A stretch of 63,172 bases of DNA, the filler included, from Octopus bimaculoides (lineage: Eukaryota), in the NCBI RefSeq assembly GCF_001194135.2. It is 3 parts of 3 records of this genome, joined end to end, with 100 filler letters (N's around TTAATTAATTAA, not from the genome) between each part and the next. Parts side by side here need not be neighbours in the genome. Positions count along the whole stretch, not along the records: positions 1 to 29,388 come from NC_068987.1; 2 more parts are not named here. One strand, written 5' to 3'. The position numbers were made by a program, and so were the translations under genes. Shown here piece after piece: positions 6,791 to 28,954 of the stretch. A model generated the notes under the pieces. It saw only the letters and a program-made list of their open reading frames with translations, searched no databases and was not told the DNA's origin. Each line of letters begins with the position of its first letter. Within the stretch, counting starts at the first letter, position 1.

Positions 6791-6911
6791 AAGCGATTTG
6801 TTTGTCCGTCTGCTTCTCCCTCTATGTTTNNNNNNNNNNNNNNNNNNNNNNNNNNNNNNNNNNNNNNNNNNNNNNNNNNNNNNNNNNNNNNNNNNNNNNN
6901 NNNNNNNNNNN

Positions 6912-6954
<43 letters not shown>

Positions 6955-8949
6955 ATATATACATATTCATATGTATATGTGTAATTATCTGCGTGTGTGT
7001 GTATGTATGAATGTGTGCGTAGACAGAGTGGTTACTGATAAATATATTCACTATATTCATACGTGTATCTCGATGTATTTTAAAATGTTAGTTCACTTTG
7101 TGTATGTGAGAGAGATCAAGTTTGAGAGAGACAAATTTTGTGAGAAAATAAACACTGAAGCACATATTCAAGACGTCATAAGTCTATTAAGAGATATTAC
7201 CGAAATAGAAATCACCAATTTGTGATTTAAAATGAGAAAAATATAGAAATAAATAACAAGTAGTCTCTCCGTATACTTAGACGTTGATACACGTTAGTGT
7301 TTTGCAGCTACTCTAAACCACAGACACGAACTAACAACAACTACAACAAGAAGGTAGACAGCCACATTTACATAAATTTACAATATTATACAATTTTATA
7401 CATACACCACCACACAACTTACTTGTATATATATATGTATATATATATATATATATATACATATAAAACTACATACATATCTGTATGTATTGATATATAG
7501 ATATATACGTNNNNNNNNNNNNNNNNNNNNNNNNNNNNNNNNNNNNNNNNNNNNNNNNNNNNNNNNNNNNNNNNNNNNNNNNNNNNNNNNNNNNNNNNNN
7601 NNNNNNNNNNNNNNNNNNNNNNNNNNNNNNNNNNNNNNNNNNNNNNNNNNNNNNNNNNNNNNNNNNNNNNNNNNNNNNNNNNNNNNNNNNNNNNNNNNNN
7701 NNNNNNNNNNNNNNNNNNNNNNNNNNNNNNNNNNNNNNNNNNNNNNNNNNNNNNNNNNNNNNNNNNNNNNNNNNNNNNNNNNNNNNNNNNNNNNNNNNNN
7801 NNNNNNNNNNNNNNNNNNNNNNNNNNNNNNNNNNNNNNNNNNNNNNNNNNNNNNNNNNNNNNNNNNNNNNNNNNNNNNNNNNNNNNNNNNNNNNNNNNNN
7901 NNNNNNNNNNNNNNNNNNNNNNNNNNNNNNNNNNNNNNNNNNNNNNNNNNNNNNNNNNNNNNNNNNNNNNNNNNNNNNNNNNNNNNNNNNNNNNNNNNNN
8001 NNNNNNNNNNNNNNNNNNNNNNNNNNNNNNNNNNNNNNNNNNNNNNNNNNNNNNNNNNNNNNNNNNNNNNNNNNNNNNNNNNNNNNNNNNNNNNNNNNNN
8101 NNNNNNNNNNNNNNNNNNNNNNNNNNNNNNNNNNNNNNNNNNNNNNNNNNNNNNNNNNNNNNNNNNNNNNNNNNNNNNNNNNNNNNNNNNNNNNNNNNNN
8201 NNNNNNNNNNNNNNNNNNNNNNNNNNNNNNNNNNNNNNNNNNNNNNNNNATATATATATATATAGGTAAATATATACATATATATATATATATATACATA
8301 GATATATATATATGTATATATATGTGTGTGTGTGTGCTTTGCGTGTTTGTATGTATATGCGTATTTATGTGTTATTTGTATTTTTATGTATTCGTGTATA
8401 GATAGATTTATGTTGTCACACATATTCGATCGAAAACACACGCACACCCTCTCAATCCCTCACGGACTCGTAGACACACCTCAAATACAAGCACACGTCT
8501 ATAACAGTGTTGTTTGCTTATTGTATATATATAACTTTATGTGTGGTTATATGTGTTTACATATATAATCACTTTATTCTAAACTGTTAGTGCGTGTGTT
8601 TCCTGCGTGTGTAAATGCTCTTCGTCCATTATCCAATTTTCCTACGGAGATAAAAAAAAAAACAATGTAGAACGCCATGGTCTTTAAGATCCCAATTATA
8701 ATCTGAAGAGGTGGGAAGAAACAATGTAAAAAAGAACGAAATAATTGACAACAAATTATATTAACATATTAAGACAATGAGGAAAACGTTGCGAAAAACA
8801 GTGATTCATGGCGACATACACACGCGCGTCCATATATTTGTATATATGTATGAAAATATGCATATTTATATTCGTATAGTTATCAATCTATCAATCTAAC
8901 TTTCTCTGAATCTCTCTATATATGCTTATAAGAGCTTATGAAAATACTG

Positions 8950-9111: not shown

Positions 9112-9991
9112 CGACGGCGCGAGAGGAAGAATGGGAGTGACAGAAGGAAGTGAATGCAAAGATGGGAAATCTAAGTGTCAGTGAATACAAGGAAGTGGAA
9201 TGAACTAGAGAAGGATTTGAGTAAGGTAAATGTATAATGGAAGCGATGATTGGAAATATTTCAAAGAAATCTTGCCTGAAGCAGAAAGACTAGCGGAATT
9301 TCAAAATTTATCCTGCGGCCATATAACCACTTCAATTTGCCGAGAATATAATTAGTTTATTCAAAGGCAACGGACAAAACTTTTAAATATATTTTGCGGT
9401 TGGATATATAAAAATACAAAATGCGAAACAGAATTGTTAATCAATATATTTCTTGCAAATATATACGTATGTGTGTGTTTGTGCGTGTATATATGTATGC
9501 TGTACAACAAATATATATACACATACGTATACGAGTCTGTGTGTGTGTATTATACATGTGCATATATAGACATAGGTAAATGTATCTATACAGTTATGCA
9601 TATATGTATATATAGATATGTACATATATACACACGTATATGCATACATACATATATATATATATNNNNNNNNNNNNNNNNNNNNNNNNNNNNNNNNNNN
9701 NNNNNNNNNNNNNNNNNNNNNNNNNNNNNNNNNNNNNNNNNNNNNATATATACGTATGTATATGTATATGCATACATACATATATATGTATGTATATGTG
9801 TGTGTTCTTTACTTCACTTTTTATAGGTACGTTAGAAAATTGCCAATTATGCGAAAAGCATAGAAAACACTAATAAAATATTTTGAATGAAGTCAACAAA
9901 TACATTTGTAATTACATATATCTACACATAAACATATGTGGAAAAATATCGTTGAATACTATGAGTATTTGTGCGTATGCATGTGTCTATG

Positions 9992-10029
<38 letters not shown>

Positions 10030-12881
10030 TGTATATATGCTTACATATACACCGACATACTCTCATGCACATTTGCACACACTCACATATATGTGTAAAT
10101 ATATATGTAGCTCTGCATCTATATGAGTGTGTTTATGTGCGTGTGCACGTATGTATGTAATATTTATATAAATAAATATATATATATATACAAGTATATA
10201 TATATATATATATNNNNNNNNNNNNNNNNNNNNNNNNNNNNNNNNNNNNNNNNNNNNNNNNNNNNNNNNNNNNNNNNNNNNNNNNNNNNNNNNNNNNNNN
10301 NNNNNNNNNNNNNNNNNNNNNNNNNNNNNNNNNNNNNNNNNNNNNNNNNNNNNNNNNNNNNNNNNNNNNNNNNNNNNNNNNNNNNNNNNNNNNNNNNNNN
10401 NNNNNNNNNNNNNNNNNNNNNNNNNNNNNNNNNNNNNNNNNNNNNNNNNNNNNNNNNNNNNNNNNNNNNNNNNNNNNNNNNNNNNNNNNNNNNNNNNNNN
10501 NNNNNNNNNNNNNNNNNNNNNNNNNNNNNNNNNNNNNNNNNNNNNNNNNNNNNNNNNNNNNNNNNNNNNNNNNNNNNNNNNNNNNNNNNNNNNNNNNNNN
10601 NNNNNNNNNNNNNNNNNNNNNNNNNNNNNNNNNNNNNNNNNNNNNNNNNNNNNNNNNNNNNNNNNNNNNNNNNNNNNNNNNNNNNNNNNNNNNNNNNNNN
10701 NNNNNNNNNNNNNNNNNNNNNNNNNNNNNNNNNNNNNNNNNNNNNNNNNNNNNNNNNNNNNNNNNNNNNNNNNNNNNNNNNNNNNNNNNNNNNNNNNNNN
10801 NNNNNNNNNNNNNNNNNNNNNNNNNNNNNNNNNNNNNNNNNNNNNNNNNNNNNNNNNNNNNNNNNNNNNNNNNNNNNNNNNNNNNNNNNNNNNNNNNNNN
10901 NNNNNNNNNNNNNNNNNNNNNNNNNNNNNNNNNNNNNNNNNNNNNNNNNNNNNNNNNNNNNNNNNNNNNNNNNNNNNNNNNNNNNNNNNNNNNNNNNNNN
11001 NNNNNNNNNNNNNNNNNNNNNNNNNNNNNNNNNNNNNNNNNNNNNNNNNNNNNNNNNNNNNNNNNNNNNNNNNNNNNNNNNNNNNNNNNNNNNNNNNNNN
11101 NNNNNNNNNNNNATATATATATATATAAGTATGATATAGACATGCAGATCTAATTTTTGTTGAAATTGAAAGATGATTTTACGAAGCAATCCTTTTCTCC
11201 CCACCAAAAGTTACATTTGATATAGCAATGATATGTTACCTCCCTTTTCAACTACTAATCATTTACATAAACTAATCTTTTCGCGCTATAATTTTGAATT
11301 ACCAACCATCGACTCAGAGTTTATAGAAAGATCGAAATTCAAAGCTTCGAAAGTCACTCCCAATATTTGTCCCGCCTATATTTCCTCCTCTTCATAGTGT
11401 ACAGAAATAAACTGTAATAAAAATACTATAAATATATTAATTTACTCAATGATATAATAAACTGTAATTACGAACGAAATAAAAGTTCGGCAGTATACCT
11501 ATAATGAAGTAATATAGCGACATTTTGTCCATGTTTACGTTGAAATGTCTCCGAGGTAGACCTAATGATTCTTCATTTCGGATTCGATAAAACAAATCCA
11601 TTTAACTTGTGATCGACTTAATCCTATTCCCCCGAAGTTGCTGGCTTTGTGCCAATATTTAAAACCAATATTAAGCTGTTTACTGACTACAACCTTAAAT
11701 TGTGTGGTATTGAACTTTCCAAAAAAATGTTGTCGCTATTGCCTACAAACATGCCTTCATATATAATGAAATATCGTGTACTTCCTCTGATAAATCAAAA
11801 AGTCAACAACGGCAAATTTTGGATTTCAGTTCCACAAATATCCTCCGATATAAGCCAATACCCACCGATACCCACCATATACAAATTTCATCTATCAATC
11901 AAACTAGAACCTTCTTCCTTGTGCCGCAACTATTAAAATCAGAGAACGTATAACAGCTTTTGGACAAAATTACAGATATCGATTTCTTGGCTTATGTAGA
12001 AAAACGTCTTTGTTGAAACAGATTAAACCAAAAATCTATACCAAATCGACCACGCTACTTATCATAGACTCTTATTTATATTAATCTCAAAACGAACTTA
12101 TGAGAAAACCAAGTGGAATACTAAAGGAGCTTAATATCCGAAGCCCAAAATTACTTCTGATCTCTGAGTTGAAATAAAAACACAACCATCTCACACGTCA
12201 AAAGACTATTTATACTTATATGGACGATTAAAGCATAACATCTTTATTTAGATTAATCAACGCCGAAAGAAAAAAAGAAAAGTAGTTATAAATTTTTAGT
12301 TGGCACTTATATAAATTCACACCAAAATTTCTAAATTTCTCTGCTTAAAGCTAGGGATTTAATAACTCTACTCTCAGTAAAATGTTCAAATATTCATATA
12401 TAATATAAATATCACTGAAATCTTACACAAAAATATAACAAGTTATTACATTTCTCTCCCAGAATGACTGCTCGATATTATACTTTTCTAAAACAACCAC
12501 AGCAACAACAAATTCTTGAAGAATTCTCTAAAAACTGCCAAACTATTATAATTTCTGCTACAGCAGCACTACTCAATATTGCCCTGAATTTTGTTACAAC
12601 AATGATAGTCATGAAACATGTGTTAATGGAAATTAATCTAATCAACACATGCATAAAAGTATAGCGAAATGACACGAATTTATAAGCACCAGTATTTCAT
12701 TTTTGTTTCAGCATGGTGCTTATTCTATCGGTGACCTTTGCCGAACTGCTTTTTAATGGGACGTAAACACACCAGCATCAGTTGTGAAGAGATGGTGGAG
12801 CTCGTTCTCTCACACACACGCACGTACGCACGCACACACAGACACGTATATACACATACTTATATATATATATATAATATA

Positions 12882-13115: not shown

Positions 13116-13671
13116 TTCTGGTGGTTGTGTGTTGATAGTGAAACGGACTTTTTTATCGAACTAAATCTATAGTATCATTCTTCTAGATGTTTGTTCACAC
13201 TTTACGCTTTAGTTTGTTAAAGAGGAGGCGGGTGGAGTGAAAGAAAAGAAGAGGGAATGTGAGAGCGAGTGAGCAGATAGCCAGCCGATGCATTATGCTC
13301 TCACTCATGTGGTTGGTTGAAGTGTGTTGTGAAAAGAAAGAGAGAATTGTTAAAAACACGAAGATGGGAAGTACATGACTAAAAAGTTTGTTGAATAGGT
13401 AGAGAGAAAGAAAGAAATATAAAGTGCTTAGGAGAGGGGAAATTCTAAATCATATAACATATTATTTTGACTAGAAGTGAAATAAATTAGCAGAAAGAAA
13501 AATAGATAAGAAATAAAATTGCAAATCATCCTTGCTCTTTTAAATAACATCACTTAATCCTTTTCGTTCTGTGGAATTTCCACGATTCTACTAGTATAAA
13601 TAATCTTAGAGAAATTTTAGAAATAGCATATTTACTCTTGAAATATAAATATTGCTTGCAGAAAATAGCTG

Positions 13672-13769
13672 CTATCATCTGTAACTGACGAGTTGTCCAG
13701 TACTGTGGAGTGGCAGAAATAGCTCGAAACCAGGACTGGTCTACTTGCCCCGTCGCTTGGAGATGGTAG
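13672..13769 (+). ncRNA. Candidate type I hammerhead ribozyme
   Basis: CTGACGA (13685-91), G13692-C13725 pair, GAAA (13726-29), helix III CCAG/CTGG, GTC triplet (13739-41), distal helix I CTATCATCT/AGATGGTAG. Helix II and proximal helix I are irregular. Confidence 0.55.
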
Positions 13770-14920
13770 GGATCGCTTCCTTGATCGCAATTTTATCGGA
13801 TGCAGCTGTGCATCGTTAACCAGCTAGATGAAATGTCCTCTTGGGGTAAAAAAACAAAACAAAAATAATCGTTTCAATGCTTTCTTATCTATCATGTCTG
13901 TCATTTGTCGCTGATACAAAATACGGCGCGAAACATTAGCTCCCCGTCTGCTCCTTTCATTGCCATATTTTATCATAACTCACATTTTTTGTTGATTTTC
14001 GGTGAACATTCTAATAAGTTTACACTCATGTCTCTCACACCTAACACTTCATATATTATATATTTATTTGTCTCCTGAACTCAAACATGGTCGTTTTTAT
14101 TTTACGCTCTTCGTTTAATTCTCTCTGTTCTCAAACACACACTCTCTCTCTCTCTCTCTCCATCTGTGCGTGATCCTATCGATATTCATATAGATTTATA
14201 ATGTGATGTGGTGTGTTATCATACCTCCCCTTCTCTTTCAGTCACACAACACACAATCACACGCTTACACATATCACATGTACTAATACATACATTTATA
14301 CACACATGCACGCACGCACACACATACACAGTCAGACACACACACACACATCTATATACATTTTAATATAATTTGTTTAAAAGTTTAATCGCGTATATTT
14401 CAATATATTCATTTCAATAATTTTAATATACTCGGATTGATTCTCATAGAGAAGATAAATTTCCACAAACATTTTCCTAGAATGTTCGCTTCCATGAATA
14501 TATATACGATTTCATAATTATCGTCTTTACACGAATATACATTTTTAATATACTATATTTACAATTTAATCGCATGCGTATTTCAATAATTTTAATACTA
14601 TACAGTTTTTCCCAATAGAATCTCAATTTTTCTATAGATATATATTTATTATTTTCTCAGTCATTCTTTTTAGTCCACATCGCCACCATTTTATCTCACT
14701 CTCTCTTATCAAGTGAATATTTTATTTTATATTTGAGATTTTTCTGATTCTATTCATAAAATTGATCAGAAAGTCGTAAGGAAACTTGTACTGATGTTCG
14801 ATGTTTAACGGGTTAATATTGGTTGAATATATGATCATTATTTCAAAGCAAATAAATATTTGGGTGGCGAAAGCATTCGAGAGAAGGTAGAATTTATTAT
14901 ATCGGTACACACACGCGCGG

Positions 14921-14990
<70 letters not shown>

Positions 14991-16324
14991 GTACACACAC
15001 AGACGTATAGATATATATGAAATTGACCTTTTGTATTTTCGTACTCTCTTTCCTACTTCTTGTTCGTACTGTTTAACTTAATTCCTTTTCCAGGGACATC
15101 GGCGAAATTTGAAACAGGAGCCCATCTTTATATCTAATCTGACATTATTTTCACACTAGATGAAAATAGTAATGCAATAACCATTTAATGGCATATACCT
15201 GATGATTTAGCAGCAGGAAAGCCATATAGTTCTAATAAGTCAACGAAAGTAGAAGATTGCCAAGGAAATGTTTAACTGAAATCACTAATGTATAGTCACA
15301 TATACCTATTTTTGAACATATAGTAAGTTGCATTGGGTATTATTACGTATTAGAAATAATGAAATTCCCTTTTTTCCCCTAAATGAAAAACATTTTCAAC
15401 AAGTGGTCCCATGTCCATTCATATTAGCTTCATAGAAGCCAATCTATTCTTACAAACAAACCCTATCTTCTCATTCACAGGACGATAAAAATAACTAAAT
15501 ATTACTTAAATCCGTGACAACGCGTTAGTTTTTGATTGAAGAAACTTGAATTAAAAGATGTTACATTAATCTATACATGCGTATGATGAATTTCCCATTG
15601 GATCTGTTGCATATATATGCTCTCCAATGTAATGCACATTGATAGATGGATCCCAGCTTTCGAAAATGAGACTGATCAAGATATCGAAGGATTAACTCTG
15701 TATTACCTATAGTCTTTATTTAATCCATTATAGGAGAAATGATAATCTCTTAAGCTGAATCTTATACGAAGTTGTAAACATGTAATACAAAATTTAAAAT
15801 TTCGCTATCTCATATTAGTGTAAGCGATAAAGAAAATAATATTTTGAAATAAGACAAAGATAATATAACTTTAGAAAGAAATAACATATAATAATATGTT
15901 TAGTGTTAAAAAAATTCATTATAATCAAATCATTTCTATTTGTACAAATTCAGAGCAGAATAGAATGAATAAGATCAGATGTTTACATCAACCCAAGATC
16001 ATATTCACTCCCCAGACAAACTCCATTTAACTTTCAGAGTTATCTTTCTTCAATCGAGAAAAGGAAATGTCATTGATATTATTGTTATTTTGTTATTACT
16101 ACGAGTGTAATTTTACTCATTCATTATAACTAATTCTCATATGGAATTATACTCAGTTTCCATTTGCTTATTGTGACATGTACACTAGAGGCGGGAAATA
16201 ATTTTATAATTTAATAAATCTAGAATTTATGTTGTATGGTATTTGATATGGCGCTATTTGTCCATCTTGTTCATATACATACCACTGATTAAACAGTTAA
16301 TTTGTCTAGTTCATTCTGGTTTAA

Positions 16325-16328
16325 TGTA

Positions 16329-16376
<48 letters not shown>

Positions 16377-16390
16377 TCTGTCTATGTATG

Positions 16391-16424
<34 letters not shown>

Positions 16425-16582
16425 TGTATGTATGTATGTATCTATCTATCTATCTATCTATTTCTCTATCTGTCTGTCTGTCTCTCTGTATAACTGTCTC
16501 TATCTCTCTCTCTGTCTCTCTCTGTCTCTCTATCTCTCTCTGTCTGTCTGTCTCTCTCTGTCTCTCTCTATCTCTCTCTGTC

Positions 16583-16627
<45 letters not shown>

Positions 16628-16733
16628 GTCTGTCTCTCTGTCTGTCTCTCTCTGTCTGTCTCTCTCTGTCCGTCTCTCTCTGTCTGTCTGTCTCTCTGTC
16701 TGTCTCTGTCTCTGTCTGTCTGTCTCTCTCTCT
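16325..16733. repeat. Compound microsatellite (TGTC)n/(TATC)n/(TATG)n/(TC)n
   Basis: Directly visible. Confidence 0.97.
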
Positions 16734-16804
16734 GATTAAAATAATGTCATTTATTTTCATGTGTGGTCTATTTATGAGTTCAAAAACCGTAGTAACACTC
16801 CTCT

Positions 16805-18697: not shown

Positions 18698-19165
18698 GGC
18701 GCAAGAATAGCTGTGTGGTAAGTAGCTTGCTTACCAAGCACATGGTTTCGGGTTCAGTCCCACTGCGTGGCACCTTGGGCAACTGTCTTCTATTATTGCC
18801 TCGGGCCGACCAAAGCCTTGTGATTGCATTTGGTAGACGGAAACTGAAAGAAACCCGTCGTATATATATATGTGTGTGTGTGTATGTATGTATATGTATA
18901 TATATATATATGTGTGTGTGTGTGTGAGTGTGCGTGTGTTGTGTGTGAGTGTGTGTGTATGTTTGTCTGTGTGTGCCCCCTCCCCAACATCGCTTGACAA
19001 CCGATGCCTGTGTGTTTACCTCCCCGTAACTTAGCGGTTCGGCAAAAGATGGATAGAATACTTACTAGGCTCACAAAGAAATAGTCCTGTGGTCGAGTTG
19101 CTCAACTAAAGGCGGTGCTCCAGCATGGCCGCAGTCAAAATGACTGAAAGAGGTAAAAGAATAAA
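18698..19165 (+). mobile_element. SINE family C, near full length (tRNA-like head, internal TA/TG microsatellite)
   Basis: ggcgcaagaatagctgtgtggtaagtagcttgc...gggttcagtcccactgcgtggcaccttgggcaa...aaagaaacccgtcg-(TA/TG)n-...ggtgctccagcatggccgcagtc; many homologues in the window. Confidence 0.9.
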
Positions 19166-20103
19166 ATAATAAAAAACCTTTTTTACACAGTATTGATCTT
19201 CCTTGGTCCCAGCCAGACAAAATTCAAAAGACACTGATCACTGTGACATCTTCCACATGGACGATTTACTGAAGTTAGCTTTAAATCAGACTAAGTTAAG
19301 CAAAAAAAAAAAAAAAAAAATTGAGACTTGATACAAAATCAAATTGAAAATCAGAGATGATAACAAAATAAACAAATTAATTAAATAAAAGCCGATCTGG
19401 TCTCTTCTGGCGCTAAGGGAGAGCTTTTAACAGGAGTATCTATCTCGATAATCGTTAGTAGCGCAAAATTGCTCTTCGTTGATTGCATAATAATGGAATA
19501 ACCACAAAGAGTACGAAACAATTTTGCCCAAGTGTAGATAGCCGAANNNNNNNNNNNNNNNNNNNNNNNNNNNNNNNNNNNNNNNNNNNNNNNNNNNNNN
19601 NNNNNNNNNNNNNNNNNNNNNNNNNNNNNNNNNNNNNNNNNNNNNNNNNNNNNNNNNNNNNNNNNNNNNNNNNNNNNNNNNNNNNNNNNNNNNNNNNNNN
19701 NNNNNNNNNNNNNNNNNNNNNNNNNNNNNNNNNNNNNNNNNNNNNNNNNNNNNNNNNNNNNNNNNNNNNNNNNNNNNNNNNNNNNNNNNNNNNNNNNNNN
19801 NNNNNNNNNNNNNNNNNNNNNNNNNNNNNNNNNNNNNNNNNNNNNNNNNNNNNNNNNNNNNNNNNNNNNNNNNNNNNNNNNNNNNNNNNNNNNNNNNNNN
19901 NNNNNNNNNNNNNNNNNNNNNNNNNNNNNNNNNNNNNNNNNNNNNNNNNNNNNNNNNNNNNNNNNNNNNNNNNNNNNNNNNNNNNNNNNNNNNNNNNNNN
20001 NNNNNNNNNNNNNNNNNNNNNNNNNNNNNNNNNNNNNNNNNNNNNNNNNNNNNNNNNNNNNNNNNNNNNNNNNNNNNNNNNNNNNNNNNNNNNNNNNNNN
20101 NNN

Positions 20104-27060: not shown

Positions 27061-28769
27061 NNNNNNNNNNTTAGAAGCTGTCCATAATAATAATAATGAT
27101 AATAATAATAATAATAACAATAACTAATGATAATGAAAAAATACGAAAGGAATATTACAGAAGAATACAACTCATACTAAAAGCTGAACTCAACTCCAAA
27201 AGTCGCATCGAATAAAGTTTTGCACATGACTGACAGATCCGGTCTCTGGACTAGATATAAAGACGTAGAAACATTATACTCATCATCTGATGGCGTCATT
27301 CATAGCTCACCTTGGTTAGTTCCCACACAGGTTGTCAATAAAGAGAATTTCTTTTCTGAATGGTTTACTCTGTCGATGGTGCTTCCCTGTTTATATGAAT
27401 GTGCTAAATGTGCGCAACTTCACTGCGGCAAAGTACAGGTATTTTTTAAGTCGTTACATGGAATAGACTATAAGAAAACAGACAGATATGCATTTTGATT
27501 ACTGGAAATTAAATGAAACACTCGAATGCATGGGTAGCAACATTTTGCTAAATATGGTTCAGACTAATTACATCTTAGTAGTATTTTATGATTACCTAAC
27601 GAAATACTGTGTCCTTGCTAGCAATTAATATTTTACGTACCAGTTTTCTGATGCGTAAATTTGTTTATCCAATTGTGTGATATTGCTATACTTAGATATT
27701 AAAGCAATGTGTTCATAGACAGTTAATGGATTGGATGTTGCACTCATGAAAGAGCAATAACCCTCAAAATATGCATATACACTCTTTAATTATCTTTCCT
27801 ATCTTCAAGCGCATTGTTTACACAGACGTATCCGTATAAGAAACGTCGTTATCCTTGCATTGAGTTTTATAGAAAATCTATAAAGGTAATCTTACAAATG
27901 ATAGAATCTCACTATGGCAGCAGTAATTGCCTCCTGTCATTGGGTCAACTCTACAACATATTTTAATGCAGCCACTAAAAACTACACGTGACAATGGTTC
28001 AATAAAATCCCCAAATAAACAATGCTTGGAAACCTTCTACTCTCATCCCGGACTGACTAGGGAGATAGACCTTATGTACCTGCTAGAGTGTATATAATGC
28101 CTTAATTTCGTAGTGTTATCCATCCACGGATTTTGAAAGTTGTTTAATGTCCAAGTCTTATCATTCCGCTATTAGAAGTTATCCAAACTCCAAGTGTTAT
28201 TGTTACAGATTCCTTACATGTTCTTTGTATAATTCACTGAGTAACCGTCGGTGATCCTCCTGAAATATGAATTTCTATCTGAGAAGCAGATGAGATATTG
28301 CGAAATACGGGCGAATCATTCACTGAGTGGTACGCAGGTCTATACAGTTGAGGGTGTCAAATAGATCTCCAACGCTTTTGACAATGGATATACTTCAGTC
28401 GTTTAATCAACTGACGTATCTATTCATCGAATGAGCGCCTAAGTGGTTATGACTCTCGAGATGCATGCACTCTTAAGCTCTTGGAACAGAATCAACGTGA
28501 CGGAGTGACAAGAATTTCTTTAAAGTTTCCATCAATTCCATTTTAATCACAAACTGTAGCTGTCGTGAAAGTCACTTCGTGAAGATGACCCGGGTTGACA
28601 TCGAACCGGCAAACTTAGAAAAGAACTGCGTACACATTTGACCATACTGTGTAATAAACGATCGCAGAAGACAGGCAAAATATAACTTTTTACGGATTCC
28701 AAAGTGGTATTTAGAATAGATGTAATTGAAGAGAAAATACCGATACTCAGAGTATACAAAGTCGAAATT

Positions 28770-28943: not shown

Positions 28944-28954
28944 NNNNNNNNNNC

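What the first reader, a model, noticed from the sequence alone, without database searches (positions are those of the whole stretch)
13672..13769. Stand-alone type I hammerhead ribozyme candidate in otherwise unique DNA
Seen, in the correct order on the + strand: CUGACGA core, G10.1-C11.1 pair, GAAA, helix III (CCA/UGG closing GGAC, or CCAG/CUGG), the canonical GUC cleavage triplet (predicted cut after 13741), and a 9-bp distal helix I (CUAUCAUCU/AGAUGGUAG) separated from a short proximal helix by a 16-nt 3' bulge. Established: natural type I hammerheads use a helix I internal loop for tertiary contact with loop II. No PLE ORF is adjacent, so it may be a solo pLTR, a retrozyme-like element or an exapted intronic ribozyme (inference). 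Weak points: helix II needs a 2-nt bulge and proximal helix I is only 3 bp.
Basis: partly seen in the sequence, partly recalled or inferred. Interest (0 to 1): 0.7.

Follow-up and report, generated by a model that had tools for sequence, protein, structure and literature searches.

The report
Dead hammerhead in a decayed retrozyme copy

Summary
The DNA is not unique. Window 13604-13854 is a roughly 90%-identical, internally deleted and 3'-truncated copy of a 361-nt dispersed repeat (family F1) of a 2.34-Gb mollusc-like genome.

The F1 consensus encodes a canonical type I hammerhead: CCAGUA|CUGAGGA|G(U)GGC-AGAAAUA-GCCC|GAA|ACCA-GGAC-UGGU|C^|UACUGG.

The real catalytic box lies at 13703-13709, where this copy reads CUGUGGA (A6 to U). 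It also needs an unstable helix II (+0.4 kcal/mol).

A sister family (F2, 82% identical) keeps the same ribozyme with compensatory changes at three helix I pairs.

Insertions show the signature of Penelope-like elements: partial tandems, inverted 5'-truncated copies, 30-40-nt tails and (TA)n flanks. The unit has no ORF and folds into a highly paired RNA. This fits a non-LTR retrozyme.

Rfam's hammerhead models hit neither this copy nor intact copies.

Verdict: an inactive relic of a known kind of element. Low to moderate interest.

The parts
13604..13854 (+). Decayed copy of the 361-nt F1 repeat unit. 13604-13636 matches unit positions 1-33 and 13637-13854 matches positions 62-280. There is a 28-nt internal deletion and the last ~80 nt of the unit are missing.
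   Evidence: BLAST against the family consensus gives 88% and 90% identity. Flanks beyond these limits are not more similar than shuffles.
13697..13702 (+). Proximal helix I, 5' strand (CCAGUA, positions 2.6-2.1) of the family hammerhead.
   Evidence: Descriptor hit on the consensus. Covariation with the 3' strand across families.
13703..13709 (+). True catalytic box C3-A9. The consensus is CUGAGGA; here it is CUGUGGA, with A6 changed to U at 13706.
   Evidence: The box is intact in 17 of 31 sampled copies.
13710..13725 (+). Helix II and loop II: G10.1, bulged U, GGC, loop AGAAAUA, GCU (consensus GCC), C11.1. The helix is weakened here to +1.3 kcal/mol.
   Evidence: -1.7 kcal/mol in the consensus, +1.3 in the window copy.
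13726..13741 (+). G12 A13 A14, then helix III (A15.1 CCA, loop GGAC, UGG U16.1) and C17. The predicted cleavage is after 13741.
13742..13747 (+). Proximal helix I, 3' strand: UACUUG, where the consensus is UACUGG. The G-to-U change at 13746 breaks pair 2.5/1.5.
13672..13696 (+). Distal extension of helix I, 5' strand.
13748..13769 (+). Distal extension of helix I, 3' strand (…CCCGUCGCUUGGAGAUGGUAG).

Best explanation
Window 13604-13854 is an old, non-functional insertion of a short non-coding retroelement of the non-LTR retrozyme or Penelope-dependent type.

Inferred mechanism for active members:
- A transcript spanning more than one unit folds a type I hammerhead (helix I 6 bp, helix II 4 bp with one extra U, helix III 4 bp).
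- It cleaves itself after GUC and releases 361-nt RNAs.
- The two ends of each RNA are held together by a long extension of helix I, which should favour circularisation (inferred by analogy with published retrozymes).
- These RNAs are then copied back into DNA by the RT/GIY-YIG machinery of Penelope-like elements (inferred from insertion scars).

In the window copy the hammerhead is disabled by three changes: A6 to U in the catalytic box (13706), a broken helix I pair (13746) and a weakened helix II. The element has also lost its 3' end.
For: Shown:
- The region is a repeat: at least 59 matches in the genome. A 34-nt hammerhead pattern has 56 hits at <=1 mismatch and 0 for the reversed control.
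- The unit is 361 nt and the window copy maps to positions 1-33 and 62-280.
- The consensus passes a hammerhead descriptor at unit positions 128-166. None of 2000 shuffles passes.
- The window copy reads CUGUGGA at the true box.
- The sister family F2 (82% identical consensus) keeps the motif. Three helix I pairs change on both sides (CG/UA; GC/CG/UA; UA/CG/GC). 87.5% of cells are paired against <=37% when partners are slid. The covariation score is 0.257 against 0.137 in shuffles, reached by 0 of 500.
- The only core position with a recurrent, subfamily-level variant is the free N7.
- F2 has an extra nucleotide between A9 and G10.1, and F1 has a bulge in helix II. Both traits are described for PLE hammerheads (PMC4209133).
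- Architecture in 46 loci: 24 with a head-to-head inverted 5'-truncated copy, 34 partial tandems, 19 with a tail (17 chains end 20-40 nt into the next unit), 17 with (TA)n flanks. This matches the published PLE pattern (PMC8557442).
- The unit has 47% GC and no RT ORF between or beside copies. The monomer cut at GUC folds at -142 kcal/mol, z = -6.8. These fit non-LTR retrozymes (PMC7229834).
- The genome holds many RT+GIY-YIG PLE ORFs.
Against: - Rfam Hammerhead_1 and the other hammerhead models give no hit at E<=10 on the window copy, on an intact copy (L019), on 20 F1 loci or on 20 F2 copies. RF00163 does detect other hammerheads in this genome.
- Helix II is weak: -1.7 kcal/mol with a bulge.
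- The covariation rests on only two or three family-level events among related copies.
- Core positions are only slightly better conserved than the rest in decayed copies: 5.4% against 8.3% changed, p = 0.045.
- No autonomous PLE sharing sequence with F1 or F2 was found in 28 PLE loci.
- Few insertions hold two hammerheads in tandem.
- There are no expression or cleavage data.
Confidence: 0.8

Rival explanations
1. One reading: an active, stand-alone type I hammerhead using CUGACGA at 13685-13691, a long bulged helix II (13692-13725) and a split helix I. It would cut after 13741, possibly as an exapted intronic ribozyme.
For: All the named strings are present. The 98-nt stretch folds better than shuffles, z = -2.7. 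A very loose descriptor hits it, and such hits are rare in shuffles at 0.06 per window.
Against: - Helix II is +0.4 kcal/mol.
- There is an unpaired A at the helix I/core junction.
- It fails a relaxed descriptor.
- There is no Rfam hit.
- The U4 is absent from the family consensus, which reads CAGACGA, and from most copies.
- The good fold is the rod-like helix I extension shared by the whole family, not a hammerhead junction.
Confidence: 0.02
2. The repeat is an ordinary interspersed element with a long hairpin, such as a SINE, a MITE or a foldback element. On this reading the hammerhead-like consensus is coincidental and never catalytic.
For: No Rfam hammerhead hit even for intact copies. 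Helix II is weak and bulged. Half the loci have inverted copies, which could suggest a foldback element. There is a B-box-like GGGGUUCGCUCCCC just 3' of the motif.
Against: - All 12 scored core positions are present in the consensus, with 0 of 2000 shuffles matching.
- Three compensatory helix I pairs separate the two families, while the core is kept.
- Loop II, A[G/C]AAAUA, is conserved.
- No tRNA-like structure is found.
- Variable 5' truncation with two fixed 3' ends, partial tandems and tails argue for reverse transcription of the PLE type, not cut-and-paste.
Confidence: 0.1
3. The element is a solo pseudo-LTR left from a full-length autonomous Penelope-like element, rather than a member of a dedicated non-autonomous (retrozyme) family.
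For: PLE pLTRs carry hammerheads (PMC4209133). The genome is rich in PLEs. One F2 copy lies, inverted, about 2.5 kb upstream of a GIY-YIG hit (L080).
Against: None of 46 F1 loci has an ORF between or beside copies. None of 28 PLE loci carries F1 sequence, and only L080 carries F2. Units join head to tail directly at the 361/1 junction.
Confidence: 0.08

Closest known systems
Metazoan non-LTR retrozymes (Cervera & de la Pena 2020, PMC7229834; Li et al. 2026 preprint 10.64898/2026.07.22.740005)
   Same: Type I hammerhead in a non-coding unit of a few hundred nt (here 361). GC is below 50% (47%). Units are joined head to tail. The monomer RNA is highly self-paired. It co-occurs with PLEs in the genome.
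   Different: Most insertions here hold fewer than two full units, and few have two hammerheads. There are no long arrays in the sample. Circular RNA and cleavage are untested. The window copy is a truncated monomer with a dead core.
Hammerheads of Penelope-like element pseudo-LTRs (Cervera & de la Pena 2014, PMC4209133; Craig et al. 2021, PMC8557442)
   Same: An extra nucleotide between A9 and G10.1 (F2) or a bulge in helix II (F1). A G10.1-C11.1 pair. Insertions occur as partial tandems with an inverted 5'-truncated copy, a 30-40-nt tail and a (TA)n target.
   Different: There is no RT/GIY-YIG ORF. Helix III is a stable 3-4 bp stem with a non-palindromic tetraloop, rather than the minimal 1-2 bp palindromic form. 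Helix I is 6 bp and helix II 4 bp, as in canonical type I motifs. Helix I is 4-5 bp and helix II 7-8 bp in the minimal PLE hammerheads.
Rfam RF00163 Hammerhead_1 (classical type I: Schistosoma Sm-alpha, newt satellite 2)
   Same: Same topology and core (CUGANGA ... GAAA ... UH). The GUC site. An AAAUA-type loop II: the resemblance to the Schistosoma loop CAAAUA is recalled from memory and was not tested.
   Different: The covariance model does not score it at E<=10. Helix II carries an extra or bulged U, and helix III is longer than in the model's 45 positions.

Membership tests
Type I hammerhead ribozyme (structural definition, Hertel numbering) | Conserved core C3 U4 G5 A6 N7 G8 A9, G12 A13 A14, A15.1-U16.1, H17, in type I order | tested here: not met
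   The window copy has U at A6 (13706). The F1 and F2 consensuses meet it fully, and 17 of 31 sampled F1 copies keep every core base.
Type I hammerhead ribozyme (structural definition, Hertel numbering) | Three helices around the core, supported by compensatory changes | tested here: met
   Met at family level. Helix I has 3 pairs with changes on both sides. 87.5% of cells are paired against <=37% when slid. Helix II and helix III show mostly one-sided or sporadic changes. In the window copy helix I has a mismatch and helix II is +1.3 kcal/mol.
Type I hammerhead ribozyme (structural definition, Hertel numbering) | Mg2+-dependent self-cleavage 3' of H17 | not testable with these tools
   This needs in vitro transcription of natural copies.
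Rfam RF00163 Hammerhead_1 | Covariance-model score at or above the gathering threshold (34 bits) | tested here: not met
   No hit, even at E<=10, on the window, an intact copy, 20 F1 loci at E<=1 or 20 F2 copies. The model does find 11 other sites over the cut-off in the same genome.
Non-LTR retrozyme | Short (150-450 bp) non-coding unit with a type I hammerhead, joined in tandem, low GC, no LTR/PBS/PPT | tested here: met
   361-nt unit, 47% GC. 34 of 46 loci cross the 361/1 junction. No ORF was found. However, most loci have fewer than 2 units, and the window copy is a truncated monomer.
Non-LTR retrozyme | Highly self-paired unit-length RNA | tested here: met
   -142 kcal/mol, z = -6.8, 0 of 100 shuffles as stable. 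The two ends are paired by the extended helix I.
Non-LTR retrozyme | Expression as linear and circular unit-length RNA | not testable with these tools
   No transcriptome was available.
Penelope-like element derivative (mobilised by PLE RT/GIY-YIG) | Insertion architecture: partial tandems, upstream inverted 5'-truncated copy, 30-40-bp tail, microsatellite target | tested here: met
   24 of 46 loci have an inverted copy, 34 of 46 are partial tandems, 19 of 46 have a tail and 17 of 46 have (TA)n flanks. The 3' ends cluster at unit positions 330-349 and at 20-40 nt into the next unit. Criteria are from PMC8557442. None of these scars is preserved at the window copy.
Penelope-like element derivative (mobilised by PLE RT/GIY-YIG) | Sequence homology to the pLTR of an autonomous PLE in the same genome | tested here: inconclusive
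   PLE ORFs are abundant. Only one F2 copy lay near one of 28 sampled PLE loci, and much of those loci read N.
tRNA-derived SINE | tRNA-like head with A and B boxes | tested here: not met
   ARAGORN finds nothing in the window or in four near-consensus copies. Rfam finds no tRNA.

The most novel reading that the evidence does not exclude
F1 and F2 may be a still-undescribed pair of mollusc (probably cephalopod) retrozyme families. Their hammerhead variant has an extra or bulged U at the base of helix II and a stable helix III, and it is invisible to Rfam. Their insertion scars (inverted 5'-truncated copies, 30-40-nt tails, two discrete 3' ends) would be direct genomic evidence that non-LTR retrozymes are integrated by the Penelope RT/GIY-YIG machinery. 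So far that link has been argued mainly from co-occurrence and pLTR similarity in vertebrates.
Probability: 0.45. Interest if true: 0.45.

Novelty: new member of a known kind. Interest (0 to 1): 0.3.

Why it matters
For this locus the result is deflationary. It is a dead relic, not an exapted or stand-alone ribozyme.

At family level there are two modest points of value. First, a hammerhead with full core and helix I covariation is missed entirely by the Rfam models, so CM-only scans undercount such ribozymes in mollusc genomes. Second, the insertion scars of a 361-nt ORF-less hammerhead repeat match those of Penelope-like elements. This supports the recent proposal that animal retrozymes are non-autonomous passengers of PLEs, and it gives concrete loci for testing that proposal.

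Tried and rejected
- Rfam at gathering and at E<=10 on the window, on F1 copies and on F2 copies gave no hammerhead. The weak hits (SNORD45, speF, SPRY4-IT1, many microRNA models on microsatellites) are far below their cut-offs and were treated as chance.
- tRNA-SINE idea: prompted by a B-box-like GGGGUUCGCUCCCC, but rejected because no tRNA-like fold was found.
- Extending the window copy beyond 13604 or 13854: alignments were no better than shuffles.
- Search for an autonomous partner:
  - The 1.7-kb spacer between two copies in L035 has no coding ORF.
  - 28 GIY-YIG loci share no F1 sequence, and only L080 holds an F2 copy.
  - Many PLE ORF stretches came back as N.
- Per-position conservation in decayed copies gave only a weak signal, p = 0.045.
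- The second loose-descriptor hit at 8703-8760 is AT-rich with no evident helix II and fails the stricter descriptors, so it was rejected as chance.
- Species identity: not established. The evidence is at least 30 large numbered contigs (C1-C30 appear in the hit tables; their count was not tallied directly), a 2.34-Gb genome, and PLE protein relatives in bivalves and in the octopod Argonauta. This suggests a mollusc, possibly an octopus, but the octopus guess rests on my memory of assembly statistics.

Full report
**1. What the sequence shows**

- CUGACGA at 13685-13691
- G13692 and C13725
- GAAA at 13726-13729
- CCAG/CUGG at 13730-13739
- GUC at 13739-13741
- CUAUCAUCU (13672-13680), complementary to AGAUGGUAG (13761-13769)

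The 98-nt stretch folds into a long imperfect hairpin of -34.1 kcal/mol, z = -2.7. That fold is a rod, not a three-way junction. Rfam finds nothing in the 29-kb window at gathering thresholds. It finds no hammerhead family at E<=10 in 13550-13900.

**2. The DNA is not unique**

A 251-nt query around the site has at least 59 matches at 76-87% identity in the window's own 2.34-Gb genome. I fetched and oriented 46 further loci.

They define a 361-nt unit, family F1. The window copy covers 13604-13636 (unit positions 1-33) and 13637-13854 (positions 62-280). It is 88-90% identical to the consensus. It has a 28-nt internal deletion and lacks the last ~80 nt. Beyond these limits similarity is no better than in shuffles.

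A 34-nt pattern from the motif has 56 genomic hits at <=1 mismatch and none for the reversed control. Scaling by the sampled copies suggests on the order of 10^2 to 10^3 copies. The 10 long window ORFs I scanned, including those nearest the element, have no Pfam domain, so no PLE ORF is adjacent.

**3. The family consensus carries a different, canonical hammerhead**

At unit positions 122-172 the consensus reads:

CCAGUA | CUGAGGA | G(U)GGC-AGAAAUA-GCC-C | GAA | A-CCA-GGAC-UGG-U | C^ | UACUGG

This has every conserved core base, G10.1-C11.1, A15.1-U16.1, a GUC site, a 6-bp helix I, a 4-bp helix II with one bulged U, and a 4-bp helix III. A descriptor finds it in the consensus and in 0 of 2000 dinucleotide shuffles. 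The minimum-energy fold of the consensus segment is a three-way junction with helices II and III formed.

The catalytic box differs. It lies at window 13703-13709, and this copy reads CUGUGGA there, so A6 is U.

The window copy also has a U instead of G at 13746, which breaks pair 2.5/1.5. It has GCU for GCC in helix II, which raises helix II from -1.7 to +1.3 kcal/mol.

From established mutagenesis of the hammerhead core (my knowledge, not tested here), changes at A6 reduce cleavage by orders of magnitude.

The whole model fails even a relaxed descriptor.

**4. Evolutionary support for the family hammerhead**

A diverged relative turned up beside a PLE locus. It led to a second family, F2, whose consensus is 82% identical to F1. 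Its hammerhead reads:

UCACCA | CUGAAGA | U-GGGC-ACAAAUA-GCCC | GAA | A-CC-GUUC-GG-U | C^ | UGGUGA

A subfamily has UCAUGA/UCAUGA in helix I.

I aligned 48 segments and counted pairs on the named structure:
- 87.5% of cells are standard pairs, against 19-37% when partners are slid.
- Three helix I pairs change on both sides (CG/UA; GC/CG/UA; UA/CG/GC).
- The covariation score is 0.257, against 0.137 in shuffles (0 of 500 reach it).

These represent only two or three independent family-level events, so the support is real but not deep.

In decayed F1 copies the core is only slightly better kept than the rest: 5.4% against 8.3% changed, p = 0.045. That is as expected for copies that decay neutrally after insertion. 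The only recurrent core variant is at the free position N7.

**5. What kind of element it is**

Among 46 loci:
- 34 cross the 361/1 junction as partial tandems.
- 24 have a head-to-head inverted copy truncated at a variable 5' point.
- 19 carry a short 'tail' that repeats the start of the unit.
- 17 abut (TA)n.
- The 3' ends cluster at two places: unit positions 330-349, and 20-40 nt into the next unit.

This is the architecture described for Penelope-like elements (PMC8557442).

[quoted passage not shown] Both are described as typical of PLE hammerheads, together with G10.1-C11.1 (PMC4209133).

The unit has no ORF and 47% GC. When cut at GUC it folds at -142 kcal/mol with z = -6.8, with the two ends paired. 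These match metazoan non-LTR retrozymes (PMC7229834). A 2026 preprint argues that such retrozymes are non-autonomous PLE derivatives.

The genome contains many GIY-YIG hits and RT+GIY-YIG ORFs, whose relatives are in molluscs. It also contains Rfam-grade minimal hammerheads elsewhere. I did not find an autonomous PLE sharing F1 or F2 sequence. There is no tRNA-like head.

**6. Weak points**

- Rfam's hammerhead models do not score intact F1 or F2 copies at all. I attribute this to the extra or bulged U and the longer helix III relative to the 45-position model, but that is inference.
- Helix II is weak.
- Cleavage, circular RNA and mobilisation by PLEs are all inferred.

**7. Verdict**

The 3' half of the motif and the distal helix I are real family features. 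The 5' half was mis-assigned to a chance look-alike, because the genuine box is mutated in this copy.

The locus is an inactive, truncated relic of a hammerhead-bearing, retrozyme-like repeat with PLE-type insertion scars. That makes it a new member of a known kind, of low to moderate interest.

Noticed in passing
G000 loci L083-L108 (e.g. G000:C1:98204613-98204904); L080:705-1012 (- strand): A second, older repeat family (F2). Copies are 72-82% identical to the L080 query copy, and the first look gave 1262 candidates. Its consensus is 82% identical to F1 and carries the same hammerhead with an extra U between A9 and G10.1.
   Followed up: yes
G000, e.g. L030:1501-1546, L031, L033, L034: Rfam Hammerhead_1 finds 11 sites over its cut-off among only 74 scored of 186,549 candidates. 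These are minimal PLE-type hammerheads with a 2-bp helix III. L030 also holds a GIY-YIG-like ORF (…NVIYCISCSFC…HIGQTGRRLGDWFAEH…).
   Followed up: partly
F1 insertions in L002-L054: Insertions end at two discrete 3' termini about 55-60 nt apart: unit positions 330-349, and 20-40 nt into the next unit. The cause is unexplained. It may be two alternative ends of the template or resolution by the endonuclease.
   Followed up: partly
window 8703-8760 (+): A second hit of the very loose hammerhead descriptor (CUGAAGA…GAAA…). It is AT-rich, shows no evident helix II by eye, and fails the stricter descriptors. Judged to be chance.
   Followed up: yes
window 6830-6911, 7511-8249, 9666-9745, 10214-11112, 19547-20103, 27061-27070, 28944-28953: Runs of N (assembly gaps or withheld sequence). 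They create the long spurious ORFs and the GC dips seen in those intervals.
   Followed up: yes
window 14922-15001, 16329-16734, 18871-18975: Microsatellites: (CA)40, about 100 copies of (TCTG)n or (TCTCTCTGTC)n, and (TG)n. More CA/CT-rich tracts lie at 14140-14340, just downstream of the element.
   Followed up: no
L067-L082 (PLE loci): Many stretches around long RT/GIY-YIG ORFs came back as N. Open frames of 588-1096 aa reported by the genome search could therefore not be read. This limited the search for an autonomous partner.
   Followed up: no
L010 (G000:C11:27399361-27399855), F1 copy a: One other F1 copy independently shows the same A-to-T change that creates the pseudo-box CUGACGA in the distal helix I. 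A different F1 copy (L002) also has CUGUGGA at the true box. Both look like recurrent random substitutions.
   Followed up: no
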